NCBI GenBank assembly: GCA_964188305.1
Contig: OZ076888.1
Reading direction: 5' to 3' (one strand)
From: Podarcis bocagei
Lineage: Eukaryota
DNA: 64,000 nt
Each line of letters begins with the position of its first letter. Position 1 is the first letter of the stretch. Shown here piece after piece: positions 24,740-64,000 of this stretch. The position numbers were made by a program, and so were the translations under genes. Under the pieces are notes generated by a model. It did not search any database and had not been told where the DNA came from. It worked only from the letters and a program-made list of their open reading frames with translations.

Positions 24740-24962
24740 CAGTGGTACCTCTGGTTACGTACTTAATTCGTTCCGGAGGTCTGTTCTTAACCTGAAACTG
24801 TTCTTAACCTGAAGCACCACTTTAGCTAATGGGGCCTCCCACTGCTGCCGCGCCACCGCACAATTTCTGTTCTCATCCTGAAGCAAAGTTCTTAACCCAA
24901 GGTACTATTTCTGGGTTAGCGGAGTCTGTAACCTGAAGCATCTGTAACCCGAGGTACCACTG
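24740..24962 (+). mobile_element. Tc1/mariner (pogo/Tigger-like) MITE
   Basis: TIR cagtggtacctc / gaggtaccactg, TA target duplication on both sides. Confidence 0.92.
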
Positions 24963-24987
24963 TATATTATTTGCCAAGTCTGGGTGT

Positions 24988-25184
24988 CATAGGAGCCAAC
25001 TCCTAGGGGCCAAGGTCCCTTCACCCCCCATGAAATATTTCATTGGGCCAGGGTCGCCTCCCCCCCCCCCAAGTTGAAAGCCATTACCATTTGAATGGTG
25101 TGCGTGTGTAGCATCTTGTGATCGATTCTGCAGGGTAGGGCTTACCTGGGCCTCCCGAGTATTTAATTCAAATTGACACCCCTG
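24988..25184 (-). mobile_element. hAT-like MITE (same family as 39621-39809)
   Basis: Ends cataggagccaact / aattgacacccctg; reverse-complement similarity to 39621-39809. Confidence 0.75.
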
Positions 25185-25559
25185 CACTGGGTAAGGGGGC
25201 CTCAAGCGTTTCAGTTTTCATGGGGCCAGTTAACCTCCCAGTTCCAAAGTCTCCCACTTTTGAAAGCGAAAGAGATACAGGCAACTGAAGACATGATCAA
25301 AACGGAGACACTAGAGCCGAACAGGCCCTGAGAGAAAACCATACTGAGCAATGCCCTGTAGGGCTACAGAGAATAAACTGACCAGTCGCGGGGCAAAGTA
25401 GCAAACGCCTTTTGGTCGCGCTTGGGTATTATTTTTTCCAGGCAGGGTCAAACTCCTTTGGGCTCCGCAATCCTCCGCTTTTGAGTGAGGACGGATGAAC
25501 GCTTCTGTACATTAATGCCTGCGCCCACCTCGATTCCCCTCCCCTCGTTTCTCACCACT

Positions 25560-26330
25560 CTCCTGTTCTCTCGGGAGGGGGAAGCAGGCCAGCGGATAAT
25601 TGCAACCCCCTCCCTTCAATCCTCAGAGCTGCGCTAATCCGAAAACTCAAGTGCCCGTAAGTAAAACTTCAGGGGGGAAAAGTGATTGAATCTGACAAAT
25701 ACAGGGTGACAAATAATCAATAAAAGCCCAGTTCGACATCCTTCATTGTTTTCAGGCACTAACGGCAAGTAATGAAACCTCTGCTGGAAGGGAGAAGGAG
25801 AAGGCGGCGGGCAGGCAGGGGGGCGCCCCCCACTTGGAGACCTTCTGCGGGGGAGCCCCCGGCTCCAGAAGCCGGATTAATGGCCTCACCTCATAGGCAG
25901 ATCTGGTCTTCTCATCAACCTTAATTAAAATCATTTTTAAAACGTCGGGGCTCTGCCTTCAGCGTGGGGGGAAACGGAGAGAGGTTGGCTGCGGGCTTCC
26001 TTTGGGTAACGAATCGCTTTTTAATTGGGGTGAGTCACTCCCCTCCCCTCCCTCCAATTTCTTGTTGACTAACAAGCAGGTGATTCGTAACATCCTAATG
26101 CCGGTCACCTTGTAGCAGAGCGCGGAAGTGCGGAAATACGTTTTTAAACAAAAAGCAATCGGGTCAGTTGTGCGCAAAGGAGCGGCGAAAAAGTCCCCAC
26201 GCCGTCGTGTTTTAGTGCCCCGCGCCGTTGTGTTTAGGGTTAGGAGTCGACTCTCAGCTTGGTTGACTTTGCTTATTTGTTTCGTTCGAGCCCCCGGCTT
26301 TTCAACCAAGATGGGCTTACAGTGAAAATC
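25560..26330. promoter_or_regulatory. Candidate SOX2 enhancer (CpG-rich CNE-like block)
   Basis: Otx-type TAATCC (25635) and GGATTA (25874), Nkx2 TCAAGTG (25647), Sox CATTGTT (25744), TTAATTAA, ETS CGGAAGT, AP-1 TGAGTCA. Confidence 0.45.
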
Positions 26331-26682
26331 TGCGCAGAGGTATAATATCATTGGGGACACGTGTTGGAGGGAGGAGAGAGGTAGGAGAGGCTCTCCCTTC
26401 CGGCCCCAGGGAGTTGGCGCTGCAGAACAGACTCCGGGCACTTCTCTCCCAAGCTGGAGGGGGCCGAGGAAGCCGCAGCTGAGCTCAGGGACTGGCTGAT
26501 GGGTAAGGATGCCAGGCGACAGAAGCAACCCTAAAAGTCATGCTCGGAGAAGACCTCCCTGAAATTAATGGGTTTAAGATAGTCATGGGTGTAGTCTGAG
26601 CAGAATTAACAATACACACGCTCCCTATGTCCATTACTTGGAGATAAGTTTCACTGAAATAATTGAATTGCTTTTAAAAGTA

Positions 26683-26942
26683 CAGTGGTACCTCGGGTTA
26701 CATACGCTTCAGGTTACATACGCTTCAGGTTACATACGCTTCAGGTTACATACGCTTCAGGTTACAGACTCCACTGACCCAGAAATAGTACCTCGGGTTA
26801 AGAACTTTGCTTCAGGATGAGAACAGAAATCGTGCGGCAGCGGGAGGCCCCATTAGCTAAGATAGTGCTTCAGGTTAAGAACAGTTTCAGGTTAAGAACG
26901 GACCTCCGGAACGAATTAATTTCATAATCAGAGGTACCACTG
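26683..26942 (-). mobile_element. Tc1/mariner MITE, inverted relative to the 24740 copy, with 4x 16-bp internal tandem
   Basis: Same TIRs, TA TSD; (GGTTACATACGCTTCA)x4 near the left end. Confidence 0.92.
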
Positions 26943-28380
26943 TATACGATTTAGGATCCAAGTGTCACCGATTCTCTGTCCCGAAGGGTGCGATCCCTCC
27001 TAAAGCGCCTTACTAAGGAGTTAAGAAGCATATTTAGCAATTCCGCGACGCGAGTGGAACACGGATGAAACGTAAAACGTGCACGTGCCCAAACAATTCG
27101 TATGCGAACACACGTGTCGTATAACATCGCTAATGCCACACGCCGTGTTTATCCAGAAGGATAGGAAAGGCAGTTTTGCACGTCCTTTACGCCCTTTTCT
27201 AAATGCTATTGCATTAGAAGCAGATCTTATTGAGTCAACGAAACTTCTTTGGAAATAATAAGCGCGTGTATATGGATGCTTCAGGCTGCAACCTTGTGCC
27301 CCTTAACCCGGGAATAAGCGACACAGAATGTAGTGGGACTTGCTTCCAAATCAATGCGTTTGTCTGTGTATTTCGTTTGCGCGCTCTCCCTTCCTCTCTC
27401 ACACACATGCGAATAGGGCGTTAGACAAAAATGACACCACAATCCTATACACGAATCTTCCCTATATTTACTCGGGAACAAACCCCACGAGACTGGAACC
27501 CAACCAGCTCAGCAAACGTAGGCCGGGCACGTTAGCATCTTAAAGCCGAGGTCTTAAATACACCTGAAGGAGTTATGGCTTGCAATAAGGTGTAATGTTC
27601 AGGATTCTGCTGCAAAAGCTGCTGGCCATCTAAGCTTTTCGCTTTGCCGGGGCAATTCCTTGTTTAACACCAACTGGGAATGTCCTGCAGTCCTGAAACA
27701 ACTCGCTTCGACTTTGCTTGGCCCTAGTCAGTGGATTGTGAGTCCCCACCCCAAGGACATATAGGGCTTCGCTTGCTTTTCGTAACTCGCTCCCAACACC
27801 CTTTTTAAAAGTGCGTGCAGGTGTGTGCCCTATTTCCTCAATCATATTTGTCCCATTATCTAGCTGAAATCTTGCTCGGTCCATCTTGCCCGCGGTCTCG
27901 CCAGGAAGGCCTTGAGAAACAAGATACAGTACTGCAGAGCAAGAAGGAGAGAGCCATTGCGAGTGTCCCTCTGTCTGCCCATCCTATGGAAAGGGACAGA
28001 CAGAAGCACACCTACGCACAGGGATGCCCACAGGTTCCCTTCAGCGAATGTATCAACCGGATACTGTATAAGTCATTGAGCTGAGCTCCACACGTGTACA
28101 GCGATTCACACGTAACGTCCAAGAGTGCACAGTCTGTGTACCTGTGGACAAAAGAGCGGGACTGTACAGATCAACAAATGAACGTTCTTTCACACAAACA
28201 CTTGTACGTGTCTACAGACCACTTGCATCTGTATTCAGTGTGATGGGGGAACAGGCCTCATACAAACCTTAGAAACATATCAGGCTTGGAAAAGGCAAGT
28301 TCCAGAAAAGCTTCCTTCCTACTCAGATGCGCTGCTCTTCGGAATGTTACTGGAAACCAATTGCTGGGGTGCGATTAGAT

Positions 28381-28516
28381 CAGGCATAGGCAAACTCGGC
28401 CCTCCAGATGTTTTGGGACTACAATTCCTATCATCCCTGACCACTGGTCCTGTTAGCTAGGGATGATGGGAGTTGTAGTCCCAAAACATCTGGAGGGCCG
28501 AGTTTGCCTATGCCTG
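28381..28516. mobile_element. Palindromic hAT-Charlie-type MITE (URR1-like)
   Basis: Near-perfect ~55-bp inverted arms; exact 8-bp TSD gattagat with central TA. Confidence 0.94.
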
Positions 28517-29798
28517 GATTAGATGCTAGGAGATGAGATCTATTTCCGCATCAACCTTATCGAATGGAGCCGCCAGCGCCAGCCTGCTCTCAAAATATGG
28601 CCAATGCCACCTTGTAGGTAACTGAGGCCTGCGCAACCATCTTCAGCCCTCGGGGACGCGTATTATGGGTGGTGCCCGGGTACACCCAAGCCACAGAGAA
28701 TATTCCCCATTCACACCTATGGGGTCCCGATTGCTCCTACTGTCTCCCCACCCACACCCCCTGGGCAGTCGAGACGGTTTTTGTCTTTCCGGGCGCCTGT
28801 TCGCCTTGACCTCTTGCTTCAAGGCGGTTGTCTGGCCAGGTCAGGCGGGAAGCAGACGCTGCCTGGACCCGTTCGGCGACCGGCTCGGGAGTGTCTCTCC
28901 GCATTAAAATCTGATCGATCAGGTTCCAGGGCCTACAGGAAGTGGAGTCGCTTCTCTGGGAGGCTTCCTTGTCCAAACGGGAGCTTCTGGGACTGCGCCG
29001 ATGAAGCGCACTGTCACATAATCGATAAGGAGAGCTCAGCTGTCACGGATCCGAAAGGGGCTTCCGACGCCAGCAGTAACGTGATTTGGCACCTTCAGGT
29101 TTGGGGATGGGCAGCCTGGGCTACTAAGACGATGCGAGGGAAGAGACGGGCGGGGGCCAGAGGAGTTGGCGGCAGCAACCCAGGAGTCTGAAGGGCTCCG
29201 GTTTGGCATTTTTGTTCAGATTCCTCTCCCTCGGGCGAACATTTTCAGCTCCACGATTTGGGGAAGGGGGAGGGAGAGAGAGCTGATCCCTTACCGCCAA
29301 GTTTGCTGTTGTCATCCTGCCCCACTGTTCTCCAAGCCATCTCCAATACGTCTCGATTCAATTCCATGCCGAAGGCTGAAGAGCTCCATGCATCTCCAAA
29401 TGGTTTGGCAACCTGGACAGAAAGTTCAACGGGGAGTATTGTGAGACCACCACTTAAAACAAAAACTGTACGTCCCCCTCCCCCTCCTCTCGCAATGGCA
29501 AATGCATGTTTTCGGAAGTGATTCTGATGGAACTTACTTCCAAGTAAGGCTGTGATTCTAACACTGTTACAAGAACGAAGTCAAAGAAGATTGCTAAGGA
29601 TCGAAGGAGCAGTCCGTGGGCCACACCTGGATCCAGTGATCCAATAAACGGAGCTTCCAGGGTGTGAAAAGGACCTCATCGGGGCGTGTTAAAATAAGAT
29701 TGCAACTCCCCACCCTTGCGCATCAGTCCAGGGGGGAATATGTAACCACCATTTGCATAAGAGCGGCGATTCTATGGCTTAGTTTTTATCAACAACGC

Positions 29799-29944
29799 CA
29801 GTGGCGTAGCGTGGGAGGTGCAGGGGGGCCGGCCGCACCGGGCGCAACATCTGGGGGTTAGGGTTAGGGGGCGCAAATCCACGGGTTAGGGGGCGCAAAT
29901 TACTTGCCTTGCCCCGGGTGCTGACAACCCACGCTACACCACTG
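29799..29944. mobile_element. hAT MITE, same family as 16882-17019, opposite orientation
   Basis: TIR cagtggcgtagcgtggg; exact TSD aacaacgc (29791-29798 / 29945-29952); internal GGGTTA repeats. Confidence 0.93.
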
Positions 29945-32755
29945 AACAACGCTAGAGCTACAGTAGTGGGGAAGTCTGCACCTGTTGGATTTATCCCTGT
30001 CACGCAGCAGTTAAAGGTATAGAAACCCTGAGAAGTAGTGGAGAAATTCTTTATAAAGAATTCGGAGGTGTAGTTCGCGTTGGTTTTAGCCCTGCGCCCG
30101 GTCCCAAGATTTAGGGGAGAAGCTGACCGCTTGACCTACAATTGAATTAAACCGAAGCGTTAGATAGAAATCAGTGGGCCTTCAAGAGAGTAAATGTGCA
30201 GCGCCCAATCAACATACTTCGGAATAAATTCCGCCAACTTTAAACTTCCAGAATAAATATTGTTGGAGAGATGCGAAAATATTTGGATTTCAGCTAATGA
30301 CTCTTGGATGATTTGTCAGCGTCACCTGCAGTGACTTTTTTCCTGAACTTTATTTTGAATAAGAAACCGGCAATAGCGTGTTCGTGTATAGGGCTTAGCA
30401 AGGGAATGTTTCAGCTTCGGTGTAAGGTTGCTGCCTTTGAAATCGTGATCCGGTTAGCTTGTGGAAAGGGATCTTAGTTAATTCATAGTTAATGCGCAGC
30501 GTTCAGCGGGCACCTGGCTGTTGTTGTTCTCTGAATATTTAAAAGCACCCGTGTTCGATGATAAATTTATGAAAAACGAAGTGAACCCGGGGCTAGGAAA
30601 AGAAGGCTGCCAGGAAAGCCGATTTCTGATTGGTCGGGGAAAGGACTTCCGGGACTGGATTGGCTAATGAAGATGCCGGGAGTTACAACTATTGGATAAT
30701 CTCCTTGCCTGGGTCTTCTGCAGCGCTCTCCATAGAGCAGAAGGCGACGTTCTCCTGAAGGAGGGTGGGTTGCTCACGGGAGGGTATTCCCCCAATAGTT
30801 CAGCATCTGCGCTGGATCTCTGAGTATTTTCCCGACAAATGCTCCTATATAGCACTAAAAATGTTTAAATGCCGGGGCTTAAAATATCTGATTGAGGGGT
30901 CCAACTATTATGCACTTGTCTAAGGCTGGCTTCTTAAAGACATCCGCCCTGAGCTCCATTAGAACCTTGGATCAGTGATTCCTTCTGCGGGAGACTCGCC
31001 AAAGGCCGAGCCCGAGAGGTTTCACACATCCATGCGCAGGAGCTCTGCCCCAGCGTCGCATCACTGACTGACTGACTCAATAGAAAAAAAGACAACCATT
31101 GCGTTTTGAAGTTATTTGTGGTGTTTGATCTATGACGGTCCTTTCACGCGTGCTGGCCATCACTTGATGTTGCAGACAAGGCGTCGACTTATCCTGAGTT
31201 GCCACCGGTGGCCCAATCTTTGTCTCCCGCTTCACATGGAGGGGAAGGGACCGAATGTCTCTTATATTGTCCATCAGTTTAGCGTTTCCCTGCTGTGTTT
31301 TCTGGATGGATGGGCTGAGGGGGCTGAAGCTCCAAATAAATATGAAATACCCTCATATTAATATTTTTTTAAAAATGATCCAAGCAGGTTGCGCCTGAAG
31401 AGAAATCTTGCAAGGGATACATGGCTGCACTTCCCTTTTTAACTTCAAATTAGGAAACTCTGTCAGATGAAAGGGCAGCTTCCCTTTGGTGGAACCGCAG
31501 CTTCATTTGATCAAATCTTTATTTGAGTGTTGCCTGAACAATAGGAACCTGAAGGGAAAGAATGAAGAAATTGCGTTGCAGTTGATCCTTTGATTCTGAC
31601 AGAGGGAAACTGTTGCGCGTTTATCAGATTAGAACTGTCCAGAAGTGAGTGTGTGAGCGCGCGCGCATGCGCGCATTATATATATATATACTGTATAACA
31701 TATAGGAAAACTAATCAGGCGACCGGGGGTTGTGTGCACGCACGTCCACAGGCGCGCGGAAGAGTGCTCTTAAGTACCACAGCTCCTTCAATCCCCATCT
31801 GGATAAGATTCAAGTCTCTCCCTCGGCTTACAGTAATATACTCTGCCAACCATGAGGCTCTCCCCCCCCCCACAAAAAAAAGAAAAAGAGGGATTTAATG
31901 AGGCCGAGCTTAGACCCTTCTATAATTTAGAGGATTCGCCAGAGCTGTAAAATGACAATGGGGACATGTGTAGTGCAAGAGAGGTGAAATCCCATCCAGG
32001 GACAAAGTTGCTTATTTCTGAAGGAGCTGTCATTTCCAGCAGGGGGGACACAATGGCAGGGCCAGGAGGGACGGAGCTCTGATCTCCACCTCGGAGAGAG
32101 ATAACCACCTGATTAAAATGGGCCTCTTGTTCTCTCGGTTACTCGATCGTCGTGTGAACTTGCCTTACTTACTATTCTGGGCAAAGACGACTCAGTCTCC
32201 CCAGATTTCAATGCCCTGAGAACTCCCCTCCCTCCTCTTTCTCTCTCTCTCGCCGCTTCGCTTCGCTTTTCCTTGGAGCATCATCACGGCCAGTTCTTAG
32301 GCAGCCGACACTTAGGTCTACGAGGATTCACGGGTCACGAAAAACGCCGGGGGTTTTAGGAGCACATAAAAGTTTCGCACAGCTATGGCGCATCTATTAT
32401 CACACACACACACCCAAAATGGCACAGGAAAGATCCGCCCCTTTGCTATACTTTTTACCCTTTGACGGCTTGGGCCACACATAAGGCTGGCTGTTCACAG
32501 GTTACTTAAATCTGTGCACTTGTATGTGAGAGATATGTACATTTGGATTTTGAGCGGATTTATCGAGTTTGGTGGGGACTTACTCCCTAATAAGTGTGTT
32601 CAGAGTTGCAGCCTTGCGCTGGGACATCCCATACAAAAACTTCACCAGACCTTTCAAGGGCACCCTGGATAACTGACGGGAGGATTGCTCCTGAGTTGCT
32701 CCGAGATTCTTGGCTTATTTCACCTATAGAAGGATGGTCATCTGTCATGTATGAT

Positions 32756-32816
32756 CTAGGGGGTTGGACTAGATGGCCCTTGGGCTCCCTTCCAAGTCCA
32801 CAATTCTATGATTCTA
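32756..32816 (+). mobile_element. CR1 3' terminal tip
   Basis: ggggttggactagatg...cccttcc...attctatgattct (ATTCTRTG tail). Confidence 0.75.
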
Positions 32817-35800
32817 GTTATTTCAGATATCTGGGTTCCTAACCACGCTTACTTGGAAGTAGGCTTCATTGGATTTAATGGTTGCAACTCCCAAGTAAAC
32901 ACGTTTATAGCCAACGCCTCTGCCTAATTATTCCTATCAGTCCTATGCGTATTTACGCAGAAGAACAACCCCATTGAGTCTGAAGTAAAGGCGCGCCAGA
33001 TTGTGGCCTTCTTAACTAGGAAGAAAGTACTACAAGTTGCCTATTGACATATTTAGGATCGAATTTTTCCTTGAAAAGAAGTGGGACTGACTTCAGCAGA
33101 AGTACCATTTGTAGAACTGCGTCCATACAGGCCAATTCTAAACACGTTTCTGCAACAGTATATCCCGTTGACTATGACTCAGTTATAATTCAGGTGCTTT
33201 TGTTGAATAAGATTGGAGGTCTTTCTACAAACTTGCTATTCAAGTGTTAAGCGCTGTCCACTGCTTTGTAGATAAGTATTTTATCTGCAATTTGCTGATC
33301 AAAGCAGATTCCCCGCCCCTCCGTACTTTTAATAGATTCGGATCCCACTCCAGTTCAGACAATTAATTCAGGAAAAGACATTGAAATATGCACCCAGATC
33401 TCCTCTGCCTCGCCTCTATTTATAGGATTCTGGTGCCCGCTTGTTTCTCATTCTCGTCGCCCTAAAGGGCTACATTTTCTGTAAAGATGGGAAATAATAA
33501 TAATTCATTATTTCTACTGGTTGGCCCGGGCCGGGCGGGAGGAAAGAACACCCCGCCCGTATCAACAAGTTCCCAAAAAAATAAAATATTATTTCCCTTT
33601 GGTGACATTTCCCCGTCCCTCTCCCAGCTCCCCGCCCCCGTCTCTTTTCCTCTCGAAGAGCTTATCTGACCGAATTCTTTGACAACCAGATCCTAAACAT
33701 AACGCTTCCTGTGGAAGAAAGCGCCTTGATTTCAATAAATTCAGCTAAAGGCGTTTAGGATCACCGTTTTAGCCGCCGATCTTTCTCTTCCCCTCTCCAC
33801 AACAGGTGTCTCTGAAAGCCGCAACTAGCATTTTCGCCCCTTCTTCCTTTGGAGGCTCTTATTTAAACAGGCCAGGGGCAAATAGACGGCAATATTTCAG
33901 ACCGTTTCTTTTGAAAAAAAATATATAGTTTTGCGCATTAAAGTTAAAAAGTAGAGGGAGTGAAAAAACTTAATCTACTCTGTCAGCCCTGATGGTGAAG
34001 CTGAAGGATTTATCTGGTCGGTCTTCTTTCTCCATCTACCCTCAAATCAGTGAGCACTTAGAGACATTTCCTTGAGAAACCAGCCTGTTGGTTCTCAGTG
34101 GGGTTTTCTTGCAAGTAAAAGGTTTGTAAGATTTGAGCATAAATCGTCTTAAATTCTAATATTGCATGTGTGGTGGTGGGGCTTTTTTGGTTGGACTGAC
34201 CTGTTTGAGCAGGAGAGGAAAATACTTTTGACAAAAGCAGGAGTGTTGTATAAGCGGTTTTATATATATCAAATTAATCTAGGGAATACCCAAATATTTA
34301 TGGCAGAATCTAGGTAGAAAGATCTTCTGCATTTTGCGCAACTCGCGTTTATTTCAGTGGGCCTATATTGGGCAGGAGAATTTCCAGAGGAAAGTCCTTT
34401 CACAGAGAATCTGCAAGGCTAATGTAATTCTGTCCGTCTGAATAAATGGATGATCAACTGAATCTCTCTCACACATTCTATTATGTCCATCTCTTGTGAA
34501 GACAGGAATTGCACGAAGTGCAAATCTGTTTCCTGCTATTATTTTTATTCTCTGATTATTGACAGTCTCTTCTCGGACTATTTATTTGAATGTTCCAAGT
34601 TAGGATATCTGATCTCCTAAATGCCAGTTAATTGCCAGGAGATTATCTTGAAATCAGCGGGGTTTGCTGCCGTGTAAACTGCGTTTTGGATCGGGATGTC
34701 GGCGAGATTAGCGAGAGACTGATTAGAAGATAATTATCTTCGTATAAAAACACGTATATTGTAGCTATCTCTGTAAAGAATACCTCGGGCGGATAGAGCG
34801 ATAGCATCTCCATAAACAGGAACGAATTCATCAACGAAAATTTCCTTTTATTGCCACGTCAGTCTGCTAATCGATCAACCTGAAGCAGAATCCAGATCTG
34901 GCTCCAGGGGGAAGAAAACCAAATAGAAATACATGCCAAACATTATGGGATAGATTGATCTCTATGAACAGCTCTCCCTGGGAGCTTTTCCCCTATGCAT
35001 CAGACAGATTAGGGATTGTCTGTGTTTTCCTATCTAGACGGACAACCCTCGACGTTTTGATACTCTGTACTAAAATGGATTTACTGAAATAGATTTTGTT
35101 TTTAAAATGTCAAAAGACACCAGCCGTCCCATCGCAGTGAATCCAGAGTAGTTCGGCCACTCAGAATCGCTAAAGGAAACCAAGGAGGCCCATAGTTGAG
35201 GAGTTATGGCGACAACTTCGGTCGCCCGCTTGCAACTTTTCCATTATTCCGCCTGGATCAATCTGTAAATAGTGTTTTCCCACGGCCCGATTCGCTTGTT
35301 AGGCACCGGACTAAAGTCCTCGGAGAGGGCGCATCGCCCTCCTTATATGCCTTCTCCAGGCGATTGTCGCTGACTCCCGCTTGGTGTTTGTGTCTCTGTT
35401 TGTTTGGAATTATTTCCGGTTTGGTTTATTTTTCTCCCCCTGCTATTTTCCCTACTTTAACACTAAATTGACACACCTACAGAGACAGCTAGCTACCTCT
35501 CCGGGTCAACATCGGAAAGATAATTCCAAGCCCCGCACCCTCGTCCCCTCCCTCCCTCTCCGGCTGCATTCCACCACTCTCTCTCCCCTCCTGGCTCAAA
35601 GTAAATAGTAAAAGGCCCATTCAGGTCCGTGGACCACACGGAAAGCCTTAATTAGGCTGATGAAATCCCCAGAAATGTATAGATTCGCTATAATCGAGGG
35701 TGTCCCAACCCTACCCCCGCCGCTCCTCTGGTGTCTATAGTCAAGGAATACGGGAGCAGCTGGGAGAATAGAAAGACCCGTCGGGGGTGGGGTGGAGGAA

Positions 35801-37469
35801 GTCATGCATGTAATTGAGTATATTTAACATAACTATTTTAATGATTAGTGATTAAAAGTGCACCCTCCTGGAAGTTGGGGACCTCCGCAATTTGTTCTGA
35901 ACAACTCTGAGGACATATCGATCTATCTATCTCACGCGTAAAGAAACAAAATATGCACAAAGCGTTTTTTACTTGTTGGTTTCAGAAGGGAGGGTCTCAC
36001 CCTGGCCTTAATCGTGTTGGCATGGGCGGCGGGGGGGGGAACTACCTTTCAGCAGGTACTCCAAGTTTCACCGAATGATGATGATGATTCCTGCCTCCAT
36101 TTCCTCCGCTTTTCTTGGACCTCCTCCTATATCAAATTTCAGGGGGGGGGGTCTCTATTTTATTTTATTTTATTTCTTACTGTAATGGACCTGTCCTCTC
36201 CTTTTTTGTAACAATAAAATAAAATAAATCATGCAGACGGGTGCCGCTATATTAATAAGCAAAGGCTAGTCCCGGGAAGCTGGGAAATAATATGTTCATT
36301 TGAGCATATGCAGAGTGCATTTGTCTCTTTATTGAGAATCTGCCGCCAGCAGACTAGCCGGTCCATGGCATCTTCCCATTTAGGTATTACGTTTGGAGAA
36401 ATGGTATGCATTTCAGGGCTAAACGTACTAAAGACATCAATTCCTTCACCTTTTGAAGAAAAGCAAATCAGTGGTAACTCTAAAGTTTACACGAACTTGC
36501 ACCAATAAAAGACAGTATGACATTTATTTTATAATCAGTTCTGTATGGCGGTGAATTGGGTTGTTTCCAGACAACAGCGTAATTGATTGCTTTTGTCCAG
36601 GGAATATGCAGACTTTGGAGTTACTCAGCATTCTTTGTCAGTGGAAAAGGAAAAGGCAGCTATTTCTCAAATGAGTGTTTTGGGTCAGTTCAGACAATAA
36701 CACAAGCAGACAACTAGCTTAGTTTGCTGCCCATTGCAGAGAACTTTTGTGGGGGTTTGCCTCCACTCTTTTCCTGGAGTGCCTAAAAGATGTGCGTTTG
36801 CAATCAGCAGTTCTTTCTCTTCGCATCTCCCATTCCCCTCCGAAAAGAATTCTGTGTAATTCCAAAGCTTACATGCTCTGGTTTTAGGGAAAGTTGAGCT
36901 CGACATTTACTTTATAATCTACGCGGGGGTGTTTGCATGCAGTAAAAGAAGCATCCTTTGAAACAGCTTACTCCAGTGCTATATTAATTAATCACTGTTT
37001 AAGGGCTCCCTTTCCTTAGCTAGGTCACACAATTAGAAACGCAGACTGAAGTGAGTGCGTTTTCTTAATTATTTATATCAGATGAATTGTGGAGGAGGCT
37101 GGCATATATATATATATGTGCGCGCGCACATGTGCGCGTGCCTGCACAATCCTCGCGTTTATTCCTTGAATTCTAAAAGGGCTGCTTTCTTTTCTTTGGC
37201 TGCTCTTTGGGGAAACAGTGGGAGGAGGGAGATTCTCTCTTACCCATCAGCTACTCAGCGTGGAAATAATAATATTTAGTGCATATTATCCTAACTTATT
37301 TCTGACAGTGCGTACACAAGGGGACGATGGAGTGGCGGCTGTATCGAGGGGGGGGTGTTCTTTGCAGCAGATTTTGGAGGAATCTAGCACGGAAGCCTGA
37401 CAGAAAGCGGGCTGGTGGTAGAGGGGCGATATATTCCACAAAGCCTGCCTTGCATAGCAGCAATCCTGT

Positions 37470-47121: not shown

Positions 47122-47125
<4 letters not shown>

Positions 47126-47162
<37 letters not shown>
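47126..47162. repeat. (GT)n microsatellite
   Basis: Direct observation. Confidence 0.97.
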
Positions 47163-47165
<3 letters not shown>

Positions 47166-54400: not shown

Positions 54401-57400
54401 CTCATTACGCTCACATCAACCCTTCTAAAAGAAGACCTGCGAAGACATGTGCTACAAATGCGAACGAAAAAGCGCCCAGGAAACCGCGCGAACCTGCAGG
54501 CTAGGAAACTATGGCGTGCATTCCTGCTTTTGCCACTCTAGGCGTGTAATGTTACTAAGGTCAATGGGACTTCTCCAGTGCGAAATGTTTTCTATTTGCC
54601 AAAGAGTTGTGACGTTGGTGCGTCTGTTCAGCGCACATACCAAACCCAGCAGATATCGTATAGGCCTCACTAAAAACAACAGAAAGACTCTGATGGGTCT
54701 GGATTGCAACCTGGACCCACAACCCAACCACTTAACTGAAGCTCAAGGGTTTGAGCTGACGGGCTGTCCCTTCCTGAACACATACAATACTGCTCCAACC
54801 CTCCTGATCGCAGTCATATGCAAGTTTACTCAGAAGCAAGTCCCATGGAAATCAATGATATTTCGCCACAGGCCTGGTTTGGAGCCTAGCCCTAAAAGTG
54901 TTTAGGACTGTGTCGACAATCCTTCTTTACACAAGTGGTTTAGAACTGGGACACGTGCAATTCTTTCTGTCTGTGATGACATATATACACATACAGACAG
55001 ATACCTAAACCTAGATGTTGCGTTATTATCATAGCTGTACTATGTAAGTGTAAGTACAAATTTAGGGAGAGGAAAGAATCTAAATCCATTCCAAGTAATG
55101 GGATGTGTGGATCGTATCAGCAGACAGGCCATCTTCACATCCCATTTGACGCCAGTGACAAAATTCCTACTAATTTAAATGGGTCTGCAGTGCATTCACA
55201 AACAGCTTATAAGTATATGATAAACACAACACTGAAATACACAGGAGACAGGTAGGTGTTCACAAGCCAGTGCAACACAACTATTCTTTTTTGGCTCGGT
55301 TAGAAGAGCAGTTTCTAAATTTGAAACATGCCACCCCACTCCAAATCTCAAGAGCGTTTGAACGCGCAAACTCAGCCCTTTCCCTACAAACGACCATCGC
55401 AGACATTTGAAATGTACTTCCCTCTTACGTACCTAAAAGCCGATAACTAAGGTCCTGTTCGGAGGTGAGGTGCTTTGCCTACAAACTATAACAGAAATGT
55501 GAAAGCTACAAATTCTGAAGAGTGGCGCAAATAGAGGGCTCTGGAAACTAATTGGTTCAAGTAATCCATATTTTTAACAAGGGAAAATAAGTGAGAATTT
55601 TTTGGGGAAAGAGGCTGGTTGGAGAGGCTTTTCATCGTTTAACCCGTCACCTTCTCAAATAAAGTAACGCAAACTAAGGGATGTAACAGCGAAAACTTAA
55701 AAGCTGAACACAGAATACATTAGAGATCGGGATGGCAGGTTCTGCAGCATGAGTTAACTAGCGGCTAGGCATCCCCATAATCTCTACTGCTCCTCACAAA
55801 CACTGAAGTTATTACTCAGAGATATTTCTCATTTGAGTACTTTAACTAAATCTCTCATTCATTCATTCATTCATTCATTTTAAAAAGGTGTGGAAACTGT
55901 AAATTTCTCTCTACAGTTTTCTTCCCCACAATGACCAGATACAGTCGATGCGGCATGCCCATATTATAAATACCAGTAGTACAGTTTCGGGGTTGAAATT
56001 TTAACCATTATATATATATAATGTAATACACACACTTCTACCGCACGCCAGTCTCACCACAATATATAGTTTACCTGCATGTAAAACAATTAACCGCGTC
56101 AGCTTGTCACCTTCAGAACACCAGGGACACAAGTGAAATGTACGAGAGGGAAATTGACCGGGGTTGTTCCTCAGCTGCCAAGGTGACAACTTGAATTACA
56201 TTCCTAATGGAAAGGGGCTACTTTCCCCTCGATGCTAATTTGACCTTCAGAGAATACACGCTCTCTAGCATTTACTTAAGGGGAAAAAACGAGGAAAGCA
56301 ACATCAAAACGATATGTAAAGAAGAAGACAACGTAAGATCGCACCTGGCCTTTTAACTCTTTGCAAATGGAACTACCGGTAGTTTCCCCAGAAGTTTAAA
56401 AAATGAGCATCACGTTGTCTATGGCTGAGTTTGTGGGAAATGGGGCGAGGGGAGTTGGTTTATATGTGTGGGTATAAAACTAATATTACTAACTTGCTGG
56501 CACAATCAAACTTCAACCTCGGAACTATTAGCTTAAAACTACCAGCAACTGAAAAGTAAACCCAAAACACACAAAGGATCTGTTTAATTTTTTTCGTCCA
56601 GTGGGCTAAAATGAGGACCCCATCACTATGCACTTAAACGTTATTCCTTGTCTCCCTGAGGCGTTTGATCAGTTCTTTTCCCATGTGAGGAAACTGGCAG
56701 CTCCAAGGCCGTCAGTGGAACTCCCATAACAAAAGTCCTGAAAAGCTGAATGAATTGGGCATATAATTACTGCACACACACACACACACCCTCCTATCCT
56801 TTGCAGCTTATCTCTTTCTTATTCATGCAACATATATTGTCACCTAATCTCACCCTCAATATTGCGCTTCCTCGCTTTTTTTTTTTTTTTTTTTTTTTTT
56901 TGGTAAGCAGCTACCACCACAACAACTACTATGACAAATTCCTTCCCGGCAGAAATTAACCATAGCTTCCTATCTGTCGCAAAGCAAAGAGCCAAAGGTG
57001 AAAAACTGTGAAAAATGGAAGGGGTTAGTTATTTAAAGGTGGTTTGCTAATTACTCTTCCCCAGAGTTTAGGGAGTCATTGCAATCTGCGTCTTCCCCAC
57101 AAGGAAGGATGCTTTGACTAAGTTTTGTTTTGTTTACTTACATCTCGGGAACTATAAGGTTTGGTCTTTGCTCTTAACGTATTTACTTAGCCGGAAGTCC
57201 AACTGCCTTAAACAGAATTGACTTACTAGTAGGGCTGCAATCATGGCTACATTTTCTTGGGAGTAAGTGTAACTGAATTCAGCAGGACTCCTCAGTAAAT
57301 CTACATAGGACTGGGCTGTGTGTTGAGGACCTCAGCTCTGATTATTTTAGTACTTGAAGACAATATCAAAACTTGATTCCATGCATGTGAGTCAAACTGA

Positions 57401-58365
57401 ATCCAATAGGAGTAACGCCACATACCTAATCACTACTGATTAATCAAGAATGAATTAAAATACATCCAATCTTTCTGTCATAGTATATTACGTGTGTACA
57501 TATCACACAAGTATACTCCAAAGTGCAATACAGATACCTTAAACTGAGACTCATTTCATAATGTCTTTTATGGGATACTTTATGCACACTGGAATCGTCC
57601 TCAACACAAAATCAGTCCTTATTTCCTTGAATGGAACTTTTTTTCTGGGTACTTTGAATATCCACCTACCTAATGCAGATACCCAATAAAAATGCTCTCT
57701 ATACAATTGCCAGTTCTGGCTTTTATGCCCAGAATAGCTGTAGGATTTATATAGATATATCTGTATTTTCACATCTGTATTTAAAATAGGCAAATGCCTG
57801 CGATGAGCTACCGCAGCCTATCCCACAGACCTAAAAAATCTAACCACCTCCCGGCTCTATGCTCCATTGCACGGCCCTTGTGGGAAGAGAGAAGCCCGAA
57901 GTACCTTAAAAGCCGAAATCTGTTTGCCGTCCAGATTCAGGCAGTCATTCCCCAACCCCCCTTGAGTCTTGGAGGCCAGCCTTGCTTGCTTCTGGGTTTG
58001 TGTTCAGAGCTGGATGGAGAAGCTTGGGAGGGGGTGGGGTGGAGAGAGATCCTCCAGAGATTGCTCTACCGCAAGAATTTGTCGCTTGGAGGAATAAGTA
58101 CAGCTATTACAACCAAATCTACTAGCAGTCTAAATAATTAATTGAACCATTGCTCTTTGACCCTTGCAAAGTCCAATAGGGACCCGTTTGTAGTAATAAT
58201 ACCCCCCAAACGAGCCCTTGTCAAATATTCATTTAGTGGTTAATTCGAGCCATTTCCCCTTGGGACAGCCTGTAATACCAGCCTCTCCGGCTTGCCAAGA
58301 AACCCTGTTAATCTACCTCTCCAGGTCAGCAAAATATTTTAACACCCCGTCCTTAAAATGCTACC

Positions 58366-58413
<48 letters not shown>
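58366..58413. repeat. (AAT)n microsatellite
   Basis: Direct observation. Confidence 0.97.
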
Positions 58414-61400
58414 CCTCCCCCCCAAAAAAAAAAAAAATCGCAGGGGATCTCCTAATCTTTATCCATGGTCTGTCTATTTGCTGGGGCTAGGCTTAAGGAA
58501 ATGTGACACTCCATCTCTGCCACCCGACATCCAAGCAACGTGCCTATTTTTGAAAGGAGAAGAAATATAGGTGGAGAGACCAGCCCTTAAAAAGGACCAT
58601 GAGACCCACTTAAATGGGATCTGGGGGAAATACATTTCTACACACTGAAGGAGCAAAACAGGGGCGTTAAACAACTGTTATTCCTATATTTCAGAGATAG
58701 GAGGGAAATCGAAAATGCTGCCTCCTATTTGTTAAAGCGGCTGAATAAGGGGGGGGGGAGCCCTTTCTAGATTTGCATGAATAACGTTTCTGCTCAGTTC
58801 ATTTAACTGTGCCTATCTCACGGCCTCAATCACGGCAAGAGAGCGGATTTCAAATGCGTTTTCTTAATCGCGCATACAAAAGCTCATTATAATTTTCATA
58901 ATAATAATAAGTTTTGGTCACCTCACAGTTTGGAATGGAGGGGGAAGGTGGCAGAATTCATTAAGCAAATTTTGTTTAAAAGCAAATGATTATCTGCGGC
59001 CCTGGATGTATTTGCAAGCGTTCACGTAACAATCCCGCCACGTCGCTCAGTTTCTTTCAGACCAAGCTCTCCCTTCCAGGTAATCAACTAAAATTAACAA
59101 CAACAATAACAGTGTCGAAGTCGGTTGTACGGGATAAGAGAATTATCGTGAAAAGTGTACATTCAACCATTTGAAATGTGAGCGAAAGGGGAGGAAAGCT
59201 TTTTACCACGGCACGTGAAGAATCCCTCCTGGTCGCGTTTACCATCGCAAGCAAATCCTTCCAGACCGTTTTACATTCATAAACGTGGGGAGGAAATCGG
59301 GGCGAAGGACTTAGAATTCCAAATACTAATTTAACCCTTCTGTCCTATTCCTTTCTGGAAAGCGAGCAGATCGCTCCTGAAGCCCAAAGGGGGTTGAGAT
59401 CCTGCGTGTGAGACTCTTTGTAGAGCGGCCTTCTAGAAAGCAAGGCCTGCAATCAAACCCACCGATTGTAGTTTGCAAATTGTGGAGTCACACAAAGGGC
59501 TGGTGGAGAGGGTTTCAAGAATTCAATGAAATGCCCCGGACTTTTGTAATTAAACACCTTGCTCCTAAGAACCCGCATTTAAGCACTTTTACGGGGAAGA
59601 ACCTCACTCACATCAATAGCACTTGATTCCGAGTTAATGGGTCCCTAAGAACACATTGCAAGGATGTACAGTCGTGGGACTGACTTTCCAGAAAGCTGTG
59701 TCCTAATTCTTGCCTTGGAGCCCGATTTGGAACAGATTTACTGGAAATTCCCTCCCAGTAAGTATGTTTAGGCTCTGTTAGGAAGCCGTCCAAGCACACG
59801 GTGCCACTTTCCCAAACAAATGGATTTCAGCTGAGATGCCAGTAAGCGGCCTAAGCTAGCAGCTAAGGAAGAATCTCTAAAATAAATGAATAAATTGAAA
59901 CAGCTAACAATTGCCATTCACTGAGAAATAATAGTTTGCTGAGGAATAATTAAACACTTGCTTCTTCAGCTTTAAAAAAAATAAATGTACGATTTCTCCC
60001 AAAACGTTCTACTGTGAAATGGCTTTCAGAAATCCTAAACAACAGTATTCATTTTTGGTTCGGGTGGTGAAACGTATACTTTCTGAAATTTGCTGTATGT
60101 AGGAGGGAAATGGCTCTATAGTGCCTGAAGGATTTCCAGAGAGAAATCTAGTCTGCGCCAATGTCTTAAGCTTCTGTGGCGAGGGCTCTACCGTACAGGC
60201 CCGGATTTATTCCATTTTCACCCCAGATTTGGCATTAGTTTTTCCATTGATTCCCACAGAGCACACTTCTCTATAAGCCTGTTTAAAATGCAAACCACGA
60301 TTCACAAAACTCTCACTTTCACGATCCTCAGGCATTTGTCTGCAAGAATCGCAGCCCAGTCCTAAATACCTATACTTGAAAATAAGTCCTATTGATTTTC
60401 ATCGGGCTTTACTTCCGCATAAGTATTTTAGGATTGCAAATAAAGTCCCATTGATTCCAGTAGAATTTACCCAACAAACAGGTGCATTACAAACGGAGAG
60501 ATGTGGGAAAGCAGATATCTTTACAAGCTAAGACTCGACATACTTTTTCTTACTTTTAAAAAAAGTATATTTAAGGGTACAATGAAAATAACAGCATAAA
60601 GTTAAACAAGATATACCTCTCTGCCAGACGAAGTTGTCTTCTTTAATGTGCGTTTTGGAGGGGCGGGAGAGGGCTTGAGTTTCGCAGCTTTTTCCTGAAA
60701 CTGGCTGCTTCACCTCGCTGGTGAATTATGAACTAGGAAGAGAGAGCTTTTGTGAAAGCCTATGGCATTACAAAATTGAATAGATTATTATTCTCAGTAT
60801 TGATGGCTTACATTTAAATCCACCCCACCCCACCCCCTCGCCCTGGCTATCTCTTTCCCCACCTCCTCAGAGACCCCAAACCCCCTCGTCTGCAATGAAA
60901 AAAACAAACCAGGGAAAGTTTAGAAAGGCGCAGAGAGCTGCCCGTTTTTGCGTTGTTGTGGTGCAATTGTCTTGAAACCGCGACTTTGCCATTTCCCCAA
61001 AACACACACGGAGGACTGTAGAAAGCACACACCAGCACACACGCACACCCCAGCCAACCAAGCCTCACTTCAAGTCCATTTTCTCCCAAAGCACAGCGCT
61101 TCAAGCGGAGATCGCCCTTCTTACGAGAGAAGTTAAGAGAGCCACGCACCTCGCTCGCTTCCTACTTCTGCTGGTTCTCCTCGCGTTAACAGTCCAGCCT
61201 CATCTGAACTCCGGGGGCTTTGGTCAGCTTTCAGGTGGCAACAAGTGGTCGTTTCTTCCAGCAGCGAAAATCACCCAACCGACTTTCTATGCCATGTTAC
61301 TTTTCTCATTTATTATAGCAGAAGAAAAGTGTCACTTACAGTCGGCTGCGTTTTCCATTGTCGAAGGATTACTCATTTCATATAGTTATCTGGGCCACAT

Positions 61401-61640
61401 CCAATTTCAGGCCTTGCATTATTTTAAGTAGAAACTAATTGGCATTGAAATTACCTTCTGAAAACAAAGCAGGAAAAGATTTCCTCATTCCTAGAGTTTT
61501 ATTCTACAATATTATTTATCACACCAGTTTATAACTGGTCCTTGAGCAGCACGGAATTTAAAAAATAACATAAAATTCATCCTGCTTTCTGAAAATAAAT
61601 CGAAGACTCAAGTGTTATTTCAGTGTCCATATTTCAAAAA

Positions 61641-61646
61641 TTTATT
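61641..61646 (-). terminator. SOX2 polyadenylation signal AATAAA
   Basis: tttatt on the plus strand, about 20 nt before the inferred conserved mRNA end. Confidence 0.8.
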
Positions 61647-61708
61647 TATCTCAAACTGTGCATAATGGAGTAAAAACTTAACTCAAATATGTACCTGTTT
61701 ATAAGGAT

Positions 61709-61848
61709 NNNNNNNNNNNNNNNNNNNNNNNNNNNNNNNNNNNNNNNNNNNNNNNNNNNNNNNNNNNNNNNNNNNNNNNNNNNNNNNNNNNNNNNNNNNN
61801 NNNNNNNNNNNNNNNNNNNNNNNNNNNNNNNNNNNNNNNNNNNNNNNN
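61709..61848. other. Assembly gap (140 N) within the SOX2 3'UTR
   Basis: Run of n characters. Confidence 1.
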
Positions 61849-62889
61849 ATGGACTGCCGGCGGACTGATTTCAGATAATACACAGCCGAGTACAACTACG
61901 GGAAATGAGGAGGGACAAAAATTAAAAGAACTTAAAATAGCGTCACAATAAATTTACAGAAATATTACAAACCATAAGAAAATATTTCAAACACAAGAAT
62001 TTCAGATTGTTTTGCTGTCGTTTTAGCTGAACAGGAGAAAGTTTGAAAACAAAAAAGCTATTTAAATTAACAAATGTGTGTGAACCTGCAAGACAATTTT
62101 TGCTTTTTAAACAACGTGTAAAAAAATGTAGTACACCCTAAACTTTTGCCCTTTTATATAAAAAAAACAGTTCCAGTTCAATGGTATGCAAGTACTTATT
62201 CTATTTATTTTTTGCCTTTTGTACAATTGCTAAAACAATTAAAACGTCCAGATTTTTGTTTTAAAATAAAATTCAGCTTCCTTTTTTGTGCAGCTGCTAT
62301 AAATCCATCTATCCAATTATCAGAACGTCTTAAGTAGACTCTGATGTATTTTAAAAATAATTGGCAAATTCTCAAGGTTTCCCCCCTCATCTTTTTAATA
62401 TAAACAATGGGCTTTTCGATTGCCATGTTTATTTTGATAAATACTGTACAAAAGTTGCTTGCAAATATTAAAACATTTCCCACCCCATTTCCCAGTCTCC
62501 TTCCCTTCCCCCCTCCCACCTTCCTACGTCGCTTTCTGGAGTCTAGTTCTAAAGATTATGGGTCAAGACTTTTTTTATTTTTTACTTTTAAAAACCTTTC
62601 CTGCAAAGTACCATTTCCATAGGAACTTCGGGGGTGGGGGTGGGAGGGACGGGGGAGAACAGGTTTCCAAAGGAGAGGGAGGGAGAAAACAAAAATAAAA
62701 AGATCTATACAAGTTCCTTGATGGGTTTGGAATTTTTTTTTCATTTTTTTGTATCTGATTGGTTTCTCCCTACCCAGTTATTCTCTGTACAAAAATAGTG
62801 TCCCCCCCAGAAAAAGAGGACAGGAAGGGGAGAAAGGGGGGGAAAGTCAGAAGTTCAGAATTTCTAATAAAAGTTTGTTGCTCGGTCTA

Positions 62890-64000
62890 GATTTCTCGCC
62901 CTCGCGCCTTCCTCGCGTCTCGCCCACCCCCCGTGGGTCTTACATATGGGAGAGCGGGAGCGTGCCGTTTATGGCCGTGCCGGGCACAGGTGCGTTCTGG
63001 TAATGCTGCGACATGTGCAGTCTGCTGGGGGCGGCCGGCTCCGCCACTTCAGGCCCGGGCAGGTACATGCTGATCATGTCCCGGAGGTCTCCGGTTTGGC
63101 ACGGAGCCCTGGAATGGGAAGAAGACGTGACCACGGGGGGACTGGAGCTGGACTCCGTCTTGACCACGGATCCCATGGAGCCCAGGCTCATTCCCGGGGT
63201 CCCCTGCTGCGAATAGGACATGCTGCTGTAGGTGGGCGAGCCGTTCATGTAAGTCTGAGAGCCCGCCATGGAGTTGTACTGCAAGGCGCTCACGTCGTAG
63301 CGGTGCATGGGCTGCATCTGCGCGGCGGCGGCGGCGGCCGCGGCGTTGTGCGCGTTCAGGCCCGGGTGCTGCGGGTAGCCCAGCTGCTCCTGCATCATCC
63401 CGTAGCCGCCGTTGGTCCAGCCGTTCATGTGCGCGTAGCTGTCCATCCGCTGGTTGACTCCGGCCGCGCCCAGCGTGGCCCCCACGCCGACCCCCGCGCC
63501 CATGGAGTTGGAGCCCGGCGCCAGCAACCCGCCCGGCAAAGTGTACTTATCCTTCTTCATCAGCGTCTTGGTTTTCCTCCGGGGTCGGTATTTATAATCC
63601 GGGTGTTCCTTCATGTGCAAGGCGCGCAGCCGCTTGGCTTCGTCGATGAAAGGTCTCTTCTCAGCCTCCGAGAGAAGTTTCCACTCGGCCCCGAGGCGCT
63701 TGCTGATCTCCGAGTTGTGCATCTTGGGGTTCTCCTGCGCCATCTTCCGCCGCTGGCCCCGGGACCACACCATAAAGGCGTTCATGGGTCTCTTGACCCG
63801 ATCCGGGCTGTTCTTCTGGTTGTTGGCCCCGGAATTACTGTTGCCCCCCGCGCCTCCCCCCGCTGTCTGCTGGGGGGCGGGAGGCTTCAGTTCGGTTTCC
63901 ATCATGTTGTACATTCAAACGGCTTTTTTCGGCCGAGGGGGCGCAGCAACGGGCGGCCGGGAGGTTTCGGAATGGTGGTGGGCAAACAAACCAACGCAGC
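62890..64000. promoter_or_regulatory. CpG island over the SOX2 CDS and 5'UTR
   Basis: Very high GC and CpG density; continues to the window edge. Confidence 0.85.
62940..63914 (-). CDS. SOX2: SRY-box transcription factor 2 (SoxB1 HMG-box), single exon, 324 aa
   Basis: N-terminus [12 protein letters not shown]; HMG box [42 protein letters not shown]...; group-B motif [11 protein letters not shown]; C-terminus [13 protein letters not shown], all diagnostic of SOX2. Confidence 0.99.

What the first reader, a model, noticed from the sequence alone, without database searches (positions are those of the whole stretch)
24960..64000. Sharp CpG/TE boundary at ~25 kb: fossil edge of a >=38-kb SOX2 germline methylation canyon
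Seen: from about 25.3 kb to SOX2, CpGs are frequent even in AT-rich unique DNA (e.g. 27040-27150, 34680-34870, 59000-59300), whereas 1-25 kb is largely CpG-depleted. All four Sauria SINEs, both BovB copies, the larger CR1/L2 pieces and the solo LTR lie left of 24.1 kb. To the right I see mainly MITEs under 260 bp and tiny CR1 tips. Established: developmental TF genes sit in Polycomb-associated methylation valleys and transposon-poor regions. Inference: the lizard SOX2 valley extends about 38 kb downstream and ends abruptly next to a TE cluster.
Basis: partly seen in the sequence, partly recalled or inferred. Interest (0 to 1): 0.7.

Follow-up and report, generated by a model that had tools for sequence, protein, structure and literature searches.

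The report
CpG-rich block downstream of lizard SOX2
About 37 kb of DNA downstream of a lizard's SOX2 gene has kept more than twice as many CpG sites as the DNA beyond it, and the change happens within half a kilobase. This is the footprint expected of a long-lived low-methylation "valley" around a developmental gene. It is a large, clean example of something already known, and no methylation data were available to confirm it.

Summary
CpG observed/expected is 0.26 over 1-25.2 kb and 0.61-0.64 from 25.2 kb to SOX2 (CDS 62940-63914, minus strand), at almost equal G+C. TpG/CpA falls in step (1.26-1.31 to 1.03-1.05). There is one change point, at 24.7-25.4 kb (LLR 120; highest of 1000 permutations 17.6). 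The right block is Poisson-uniform. The step lies inside about 0.5 kb made of a (GT)n run, a TA-flanked MITE and a second repeat.

Four SINE copies and two BovB tails are all on the left. On the right I found only small MITE-like repeats.

The composition fits long-term reduced germline methylation, roughly one fifth of the flank's excess CpG mutability in a simple model. Selection is unlikely, because the first 1.5 kb of the block diverges as fast as the flank in four related species. However, CpGs there still change about 9.5 times faster than other sites (CI 3.6-25), so the block is not fully protected and may be partly a decaying relic.

No methylation or Polycomb data could be reached. 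Broad unmethylated domains at developmental genes, including Sox2 in mouse, are published, so this is a new member of a known kind. The scan has an unchecked note of a similar boundary at GATA3.

The parts
1..25200 (.). CpG-depleted flank. CpG o/e is 0.26, or 0.206 without the identified young repeats. TpG/CpA o/e is 1.26-1.31.
10394..10759 (+). SINE copy 1 of 4.
16027..16383 (-). SINE copy 2 of 4
17955..18299 (+). SINE copy 3 of 4
23702..24055 (+). SINE copy 4 of 4. Very high word depth in four related genomes.
12566..12800 (+). BovB-type LINE 3' tail, copy 1. Named from my own recollection of the BovB 3' end.
21764..21998 (+). BovB-type LINE 3' tail, copy 2. It is 92% identical to copy 1 and has high word depth.
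24694..24736 (.). (TG)n microsatellite at the step. The short-read contigs of all four related species end here.
24736..24966 (.). High-copy MITE with 23-nt terminal inverted repeats and TA on both flanks. It sits exactly at the step.
24987..25185 (.). Moderately repeated element, 72% identical to 39620-39810 in inverted orientation. It is the last repeat before the unique CpG-rich DNA.
25201..61708 (.). CpG-retaining block. CpG o/e is 0.61, TpG/CpA o/e 1.03-1.05, dispersion index 1.15. No internal break is significant at the 99% threshold.
25201..31000 (.). Distal and most CpG-rich part of the block: o/e 0.72, G+C 0.50. The stretch 25200-26599 is single-copy in four related genomes.
26681..26947 (.). 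Second copy of the boundary MITE, inverted, high-copy, lying inside the block
28372..28523 (.). Palindromic MITE inside the block. It gives a sub-threshold match to the miRNA family mir-5408.
47535..47686 (.). Second copy of the palindromic MITE inside the block
61709..61848 (.). Assembly gap or masked stretch of 140 N. It lies in the SOX2 3' untranslated region and was left unfilled.
61641..61646 (-). AATAAA polyadenylation signal on the SOX2 strand, about 1.3 kb after the stop codon
62940..63914 (-). SOX2 coding sequence, a single intact exon of 324 aa including the stop codon. CpG o/e 0.87, G+C 0.64.

Best explanation
From 25.2 kb up to and including SOX2, the window is one continuous domain whose CpGs have been lost to methyl-cytosine deamination much more slowly than in the neighbouring bulk DNA. 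The most likely cause is that this domain has long been weakly methylated in the germ line and early embryo. That would make it a broad non-methylated island, also called a DNA methylation valley, of the kind that surrounds developmental transcription-factor genes in vertebrates and is usually marked by Polycomb.

The edge of this domain has stayed at the same place long enough for both sides to approach their own CpG equilibria. As a result the sequence records the edge as a step less than 0.5 kb wide.

Large retroelements (SINEs, LINE tails) have accumulated only outside the domain. Inside it only small DNA-transposon relics persist. Either insertions in this enhancer-rich block are selected against, or its chromatin is a poor target for them.

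Shown: the compositional step, its uniqueness, its sharpness, its independence from G+C and from TE content, the SOX2 gene itself, and the lack of constraint at the domain's edge.

Inferred: that low methylation is the cause, that the germ line is where it acts, and that Polycomb is involved.

The intermediate level (0.61) and the CpG changes seen between species mean that protection is partial, not complete.
For: - CpG o/e is 0.26 on the left and 0.61-0.64 on the right at equal G+C, with a reciprocal TpG/CpA shift from 1.26-1.31 to 1.03-1.05.
- There is one change point, with LLR 120 against a permutation maximum of 17.6. No second break appears by binary segmentation.
- The right block is Poisson-uniform (dispersion 1.15), so it is not a patchwork of islands and methylated spacer.
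- The left side without its young repeats is even poorer in CpG, at 0.206.
- In a neighbour-dependent mutation simulation, o/e 0.61 corresponds to a CpG transition excess k of about 3. The values 0.26 and 0.206 correspond to k of about 10 and 14. The block has therefore seen about one fifth of the flank's excess CpG mutability.
- Divergence from four related species is as high at 25.0-26.7 kb (135/6244) as in the left unique DNA (116/6331). Constraint therefore does not explain CpG retention there.
- The SOX2 ORF is intact, with SOXp and HMG domains. Its best solved-structure matches are SOX-2.
- Published work: broad non-methylated islands at developmental TF genes are conserved across vertebrates, in a study that included Anolis testis and liver (PMC3583005). 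DMVs are hypomethylated in germ cells, sperm, oocytes and embryos, and show low deamination rates (PMC5806489). Sox2 appears in that paper's supplementary gene tables, 21 times in file 2 and once in file 3.
Against: - No methylation or chromatin data for this species were reachable.
- An o/e of 0.61 is well below the level of fully unmethylated DNA.
- In 25160-26359, 8 of the 16 listed transitions against organisms F and G involve a CpG. That is 8 per 114 CpG positions against 8 per 1086 other positions, about 9.5-fold (CI roughly 3.6-25). This is at or above the k of about 3 expected at equilibrium.
- Paired TE copies on the two sides give no clear difference in CpG retention.
- No contig from the four related species bridges 24686 to 24993.
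- The modelled TpG/CpA value for k = 3 is 1.19, higher than the observed 1.04. The simple model therefore does not fit perfectly.
Confidence: 0.62

Rival explanations
1. Decaying relic. The block was unmethylated in an ancestor, when its o/e was near 0.9, but it is now methylated in the germ line like the flank. Its CpGs are being lost, and 0.61 is a snapshot on the way down to about 0.25.
For: The CpG transition excess at 25160-26359 is about 9.5-fold, close to the k of about 10 inferred for the methylated flank.
Against: - The lower confidence limit, about 3.6, nearly reaches the equilibrium value of about 3.
- Only 1.2 kb at the very edge was sampled, and valley edges are known to be the least protected part.
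- TpG/CpA is 1.03-1.05 across the block, so there is little accumulated deamination product.
- The uniformity over 36 kb and the sharp edge would require the whole block to have switched state at once.
- Sox2 appears in the supplementary DMV gene tables of a study of present-day mouse tissue methylomes.
Confidence: 0.17
2. Purifying selection. The region is packed with conserved SOX2 enhancers, and CpGs are kept because the elements that contain them are under constraint, whatever their methylation state.
For: The SOX2 3' region is known to hold many conserved enhancers (established knowledge). The scan's unchecked note s1-335576 proposes an N1-like enhancer at 41540-41990.
Against: - Retention is uniform in 500-nt windows across 36 kb (dispersion 1.15). 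It also holds in windows with under 40% G+C and in inserted MITEs, which have o/e 0.55.
- The stretch 25.0-26.7 kb diverges as fast as the flank, 2.2% against 1.8%, yet has o/e 0.6-0.8.
Confidence: 0.07
3. Assembly misjoin. Two unrelated genomic regions were joined at the (GT)n run and high-copy MITE at 24.69-24.97 kb, so the 'boundary' is an artefact of assembly.
For: The step coincides exactly with a microsatellite and a repeat of very high copy number. None of the short-read contigs of four related species bridges 24686-24993.
Against: - There is no N at that place. The only gap in the window is at 61.7 kb.
- Short-read contigs break at such repeats everywhere, so the lack of a bridge carries little weight.
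- Both flanks are present as single-copy DNA in all four species.
- Even if the join were false, the 36-kb CpG-rich block next to SOX2 would remain.
Confidence: 0.04
4. GC-biased gene conversion or a recombination-rich domain raises CpG on the right.
For: Unmethylated CpG-rich regions can act as recombination hotspots in some squamates and birds (established knowledge, not tested here).
Against: G+C is almost the same on both sides, 0.449 and 0.465. GpC o/e is unchanged, 1.06 and 1.02. Only CpG and its deamination products differ.
Confidence: 0.03

Closest known systems
DNA methylation valleys / canyons / broad non-methylated islands / K27HMDs at developmental transcription-factor genes (Xie 2013 and Jeong 2014 from my own knowledge; Long 2013 PMC3583005; Li 2018 PMC5806489; Nakamura 2014 as cited in PMC4331722)
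   Same: - A multi-kilobase domain that includes a key developmental TF gene.
- Sharp edges and a low-deamination (CpG-retaining) signature.
- Li 2018 calls DMVs highly conserved across vertebrates, and Sox2 appears in that paper's supplementary gene tables.
   Different: - This one is known only from sequence composition. Methylation and H3K27me3 were not measured.
- It reaches at least 36-38 kb on one side of a single gene. Single-gene examples given for medaka are 4-20 kb, and only the hoxa cluster reaches about 90 kb.
- CpG o/e is intermediate (0.61) and uniform, not a string of islands.
- Apart from the SOX2 coding sequence, the highest CpG retention is at the edge farthest from the gene.
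Hyperconserved CpG domains underlying Polycomb-binding sites (Tanay et al. 2007, as cited in PMC4804638 and PMC5806489)
   Same: Large CpG-rich domains at developmental regulators, read from sequence. 77% of the human ones lie within DMVs.
   Different: Those domains are defined by CpG conservation between species. Here 6 of 57 CpGs in the sampled 1.2 kb differ by a transition in species only about 3% diverged, so hyperconservation is not shown.
Transposon-free regions around developmental genes (Simons et al. 2006, as cited in PMC3465993)
   Same: SINEs and LINE tails are absent from the 36 kb next to SOX2 and present just outside it.
   Different: The block is not transposon-free. At least five MITE-like repeats and several roughly 53-nt retroelement tips lie inside it.

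Membership tests
DNA methylation valley / canyon / broad non-methylated island | Contiguous region of at least 3.5-5 kb with very low CpG methylation in measured methylomes | not testable with these tools
   None of the 24 runs returned is labelled as bisulfite. The four with library descriptions are WGS or Hi-C. No lizard methylome for this locus turned up in the paper searches.
DNA methylation valley / canyon / broad non-methylated island | Encloses a developmental transcription-factor gene | tested here: met
   An intact SOX2 ORF at 62940-63914 lies inside the CpG-rich domain.
DNA methylation valley / canyon / broad non-methylated island | Reduced deamination, seen as CpG retention relative to the surroundings | tested here: met
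   By composition: o/e 0.61 against 0.26, TpG/CpA 1.04 against 1.28, one change point. The direct substitution test at the edge was inconclusive.
DNA methylation valley / canyon / broad non-methylated island | H3K27me3 / Polycomb occupancy in cells where the gene is silent | not testable with these tools
   No chromatin data available.
Hyperconserved CpG domain | CpGs conserved between species beyond the neutral expectation | tested here: inconclusive
   In 25160-26359, 6 of 57 CpGs differ by a transition and 5 by a transversion in organisms F and G. Only the edge was sampled and the table was truncated.
Classical CpG island (G+C at least 0.5, o/e at least 0.6) | Both thresholds met over the region | tested here: not met
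   The block as a whole has G+C 0.463. Windows meeting the island criteria cover 41% of the right side and 10% of the left.
Transposon-free region | No transposon-derived sequence over at least 5-10 kb | tested here: inconclusive
   Small repeats lie at 26.7, 28.4, 29.8, 39.7 and 47.6 kb. There was no repeat library, and copy-number information exists only for 21-27 kb.

The most novel reading that the evidence does not exclude
In this lizard lineage the SOX2 valley is unusually large. It would be a single, uniformly protected block of at least 36-38 kb that covers the whole proximal 3' enhancer cluster. Its far edge would have been fixed to within 0.5 kb for tens of millions of years. Outside the SOX2 gene itself, the strongest CpG retention is in the distal 6 kb (o/e 0.72), not next to the gene. 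That would point to a separate, sequence-encoded nucleation or boundary element about 37 kb from the gene. Such an element could be located from sequence alone and then tested.
Probability: 0.22. Interest if true: 0.55.

Novelty: new member of a known kind. Interest (0 to 1): 0.35.

Why it matters
If the block is a germline low-methylation domain, the sequence alone gives a base-pair-scale, evolution-averaged map of its edge in a species with no methylome for this locus. Such 'fossil' edges could be used to map valley boundaries across non-model vertebrates. They could also show whether boundaries are fixed by sequence, and how transposon tolerance changes across them. The unusual one-sided length, and the CpG maximum at the far edge, make this locus a convenient test case. 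The underlying principle, that valleys at developmental genes have low deamination and few transposons, is already published.

Tried and rejected
I could not fetch SOX2 flanks from other species or extend the view upstream of SOX2.
- Pfam scans of 29 long open frames, 20 on the left and 9 on the right, gave no reverse transcriptase or any other domain.
- ARAGORN found no tRNA-like SINE heads. Rfam gave nothing at gathering score and no SOX2OT exon at E up to 1.
- The CTCF core consensus gave 0 hits with up to 1 mismatch, against 0.5 expected by chance.
- The test of CpG retention in paired TE copies had too few informative sites. The element pair 24987/39620 favours the right copy 4:0, but the other pairs are balanced.
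Logan contigs of four related species were laid on 21000-26999.
- Paper searches found no lizard methylome usable for this locus. Tanay 2007 is not held in the library.
- The scan's own notes had nothing under 'SOX2'.
- gBGC and 'TEs dilute CpG on the left' were considered and rejected on composition.
- The N stretch was not filled.


Full report
What is there.

The window ends in an intact single-exon SOX2 gene on the minus strand (ATG 63914, stop 62940, 324 aa). It has SOXp and HMG-box domains, and its best matches among solved structures are all SOX-2. Everything at lower coordinates is therefore DNA 3' of SOX2.

The 140-N stretch at 61709-61848 lies 1.09 kb beyond the stop codon, in AT-rich non-coding sequence. 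A minus-strand AATAAA at 61641-61646 lies just to its left, so the gap sits in or at the end of the 3' UTR. From memory only, untested and without supplying any letters: the two flanks read like consecutive, co-linear parts of the conserved vertebrate SOX2 3' UTR. No frame crosses the gap and no statistic below depends on it. I did not fill it, and I could not test its continuity with reads.

The observation.

- CpG o/e is 0.263 for 1-24960 and 0.628 for 24961-64000, at G+C 0.449 and 0.465. GpC o/e is 1.06 and 1.02.
- A Poisson likelihood scan puts the single best change point at 25300, on a plateau from 24700 to 25400. Its LLR is 119.8, and the largest value in 1000 bin permutations is 17.6.
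- Binary segmentation with a 99% permutation threshold returns exactly two segments, 1-25200 and 25201-64000.
- The contrast holds in every G+C class. It is mirrored by TpG/CpA, at 1.31/1.26 on the left and 1.03/1.05 on the right.
- Counts in 500-nt windows are almost Poisson on the right (dispersion 1.15) and over-dispersed on the left (2.18). The left-hand excess comes from young, CpG-rich repeats. The identified repeats there have o/e 0.58 and the remainder 0.206. Transposons therefore raise CpG on the left. They do not lower it.

The step itself.

The last unique DNA on the left, 24151-24686, holds 3 CpGs in 536 nt. The first unique DNA on the right, 25251-25500, has o/e 0.77. Between them lie only three things:
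- a (TG)n run at 24694-24736;
- a MITE at 24736-24966, with 23-nt terminal inverted repeats and TA on both flanks;
- a second repeat at 24987-25185.

Word depths of contigs from four related species confirm the pattern. Bins 24600-24999 are very high copy and 25000-25199 is moderately repeated. The stretches 24200-24599 and 25200-26599 are low-copy or single-copy. The step is therefore as sharp as unique sequence can resolve, under 0.5 kb.

Transposons.

Four copies of a roughly 350-nt SINE and two BovB-type 3' tails all lie left of 24.1 kb, with no copy on the right. On the right I found:
- a second copy of the boundary MITE (26681-26947);
- a palindromic MITE in two copies (28372-28523 and 47535-47686);
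- a CpG-dense 140-nt element (29799-29944, with a partner at 16882-17019);
- the partner of the 24987 element (39620-39810);
- several roughly 53-nt fragments of one old family.

By self-similarity, 2459 nt on the left and 908 nt on the right are repeated within the window. No repeat library was available, and 29 long open frames gave no Pfam domain. The CR1/L2 pieces and the solo LTR therefore remain unchecked.

What causes the CpG difference.

The signature is that of a difference in methyl-CpG deamination: CpG up, its deamination products down, G+C and GpC unchanged. In a neighbour-dependent mutation simulation (transition/transversion ratio 2.5), o/e 0.61 corresponds to a CpG transition excess k of about 3. 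The values 0.26 and 0.206 correspond to k of about 10 and 14. At equilibrium the block would thus have had roughly one fifth of the flank's excess CpG mutability. The model is crude. It predicts TpG/CpA of 1.19 at k = 3, whereas 1.04 is observed.

Selection is an unlikely cause.
- Retention is uniform across the block. It is present in windows with under 40% G+C and in inserted MITEs.
- The first 1.5 kb of the block diverges from four related species as fast as the left unique DNA, 135/6244 against 116/6331 differences (table 8).

gBGC is excluded by the unchanged G+C.

A caveat from the same reads experiment.

In 25160-26359 (57 CpGs), the listed differences from organisms F and G include 6 transitions that remove a window CpG and 2 that would create one. 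There are 8 transitions at other positions. That is 8 per 114 against 8 per 1086 positions, about 9.5-fold, with a rough 95% interval of 3.6-25. Five of the nine transversions also hit CpGs.

The CpGs at the edge of the block are therefore clearly still hypermutable. This fits partial methylation, or erosion of the valley edge, and it does not exclude the reading that the block is a relic now decaying. Paired TE copies across the boundary were also too few to decide.

Inside the block.

CpG o/e is highest at the far edge: 0.72 at 25.2-31 kb, 0.62 at 31-45 kb and 0.55 at 45-59 kb. The Spearman correlation is -0.43 with p = 0.009. Protection does not simply fade with distance from the SOX2 island. 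The distal 6 kb may be a CpG-rich nucleus of its own. This split did not pass the 99% threshold in the segmentation, so I treat it as a lead.

Contiguity.

No short-read contig of the four species bridges 24686 to 24993, because they all stop in the microsatellite or the MITE. The window has no N there, and both flanks are single-copy in all four species. I rate a misjoin as unlikely, about 4%, but it was not independently excluded.

Comparison with what is known.

- Broad non-methylated islands covering developmental TF genes and marked by H3K27me3 were described in a study of seven vertebrates that included Anolis testis and liver (PMC3583005).
- DMVs are hypomethylated in primordial germ cells, sperm, oocytes and embryos. 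They are conserved from fish to human and show low deamination rates. They contain 77% of Tanay's hyperconserved CpG domains (PMC5806489).
- Sox2 appears 21 times in that paper's supplementary file 2 and once in file 3, which are its gene tables.
- Sizes quoted for medaka are 4-20 kb for single genes and about 90 kb for the hoxa cluster (PMC4331722).
- Transposon-free regions near developmental genes and CpG islands are also known (Simons 2006, via PMC3465993).

The finding is therefore a new and unusually long instance of a known kind, read from sequence alone. The scan holds an unchecked note of a similar boundary at GATA3 in the same genome (s1-340310).

Limits.

- No methylome was reachable.

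Noticed in passing
window 28381-28516 and 47543-47676; weaker at 24130-24213: The palindromic MITE hairpins match the Rfam miRNA family mir-5408 below its gathering score (56.6 and 48.7 bits against 90; 29.7 bits for the third). This looks like a MITE-derived hairpin family, not evidence of a miRNA gene.
   Followed up: partly
window 25160-26359: Five of the nine listed transversions against organisms F and G are C<->G changes at CpG sites (25207, 25493, 25500, 25547, 25572). This excess of CpG transversions is unusual and unexplained. The numbers are small.
   Followed up: no
window 24288-24455: These 168 nt are replaced by about 22 other letters in a contig of organism F (record 4), and a contig of organism G breaks off at the same point (24287). 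Contigs of organisms C and E cover the stretch. It is a lineage-specific indel just left of the step.
   Followed up: no
window 16882-17019 and 29799-29944: A young (90% identical), very CpG-dense element of about 140 nt with inverted ends, one copy on each side of the step. Both copies keep 10-11 CpGs, so it is too young to record the methylation difference.
   Followed up: partly
window 25201-31000: Outside SOX2 itself, this is the most CpG-rich part of the block (o/e 0.72, G+C 0.50), and it lies at the edge farthest from the gene. It could be an orphan CpG-island cluster, a poised enhancer or an unannotated promoter.
   Followed up: partly
window 61709-61848: The 140-N stretch interrupts the SOX2 3' UTR about 65 nt upstream (in the mRNA sense) of the AATAAA at 61641-61646. 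The coding sequence is untouched.
   Followed up: partly
window 21000-21400: Word depth is very high in four related genomes (up to 3.4 million). Many loose ends at 21153 and 21193 mark the ends of another high-copy element that has no second copy in the window.
   Followed up: no
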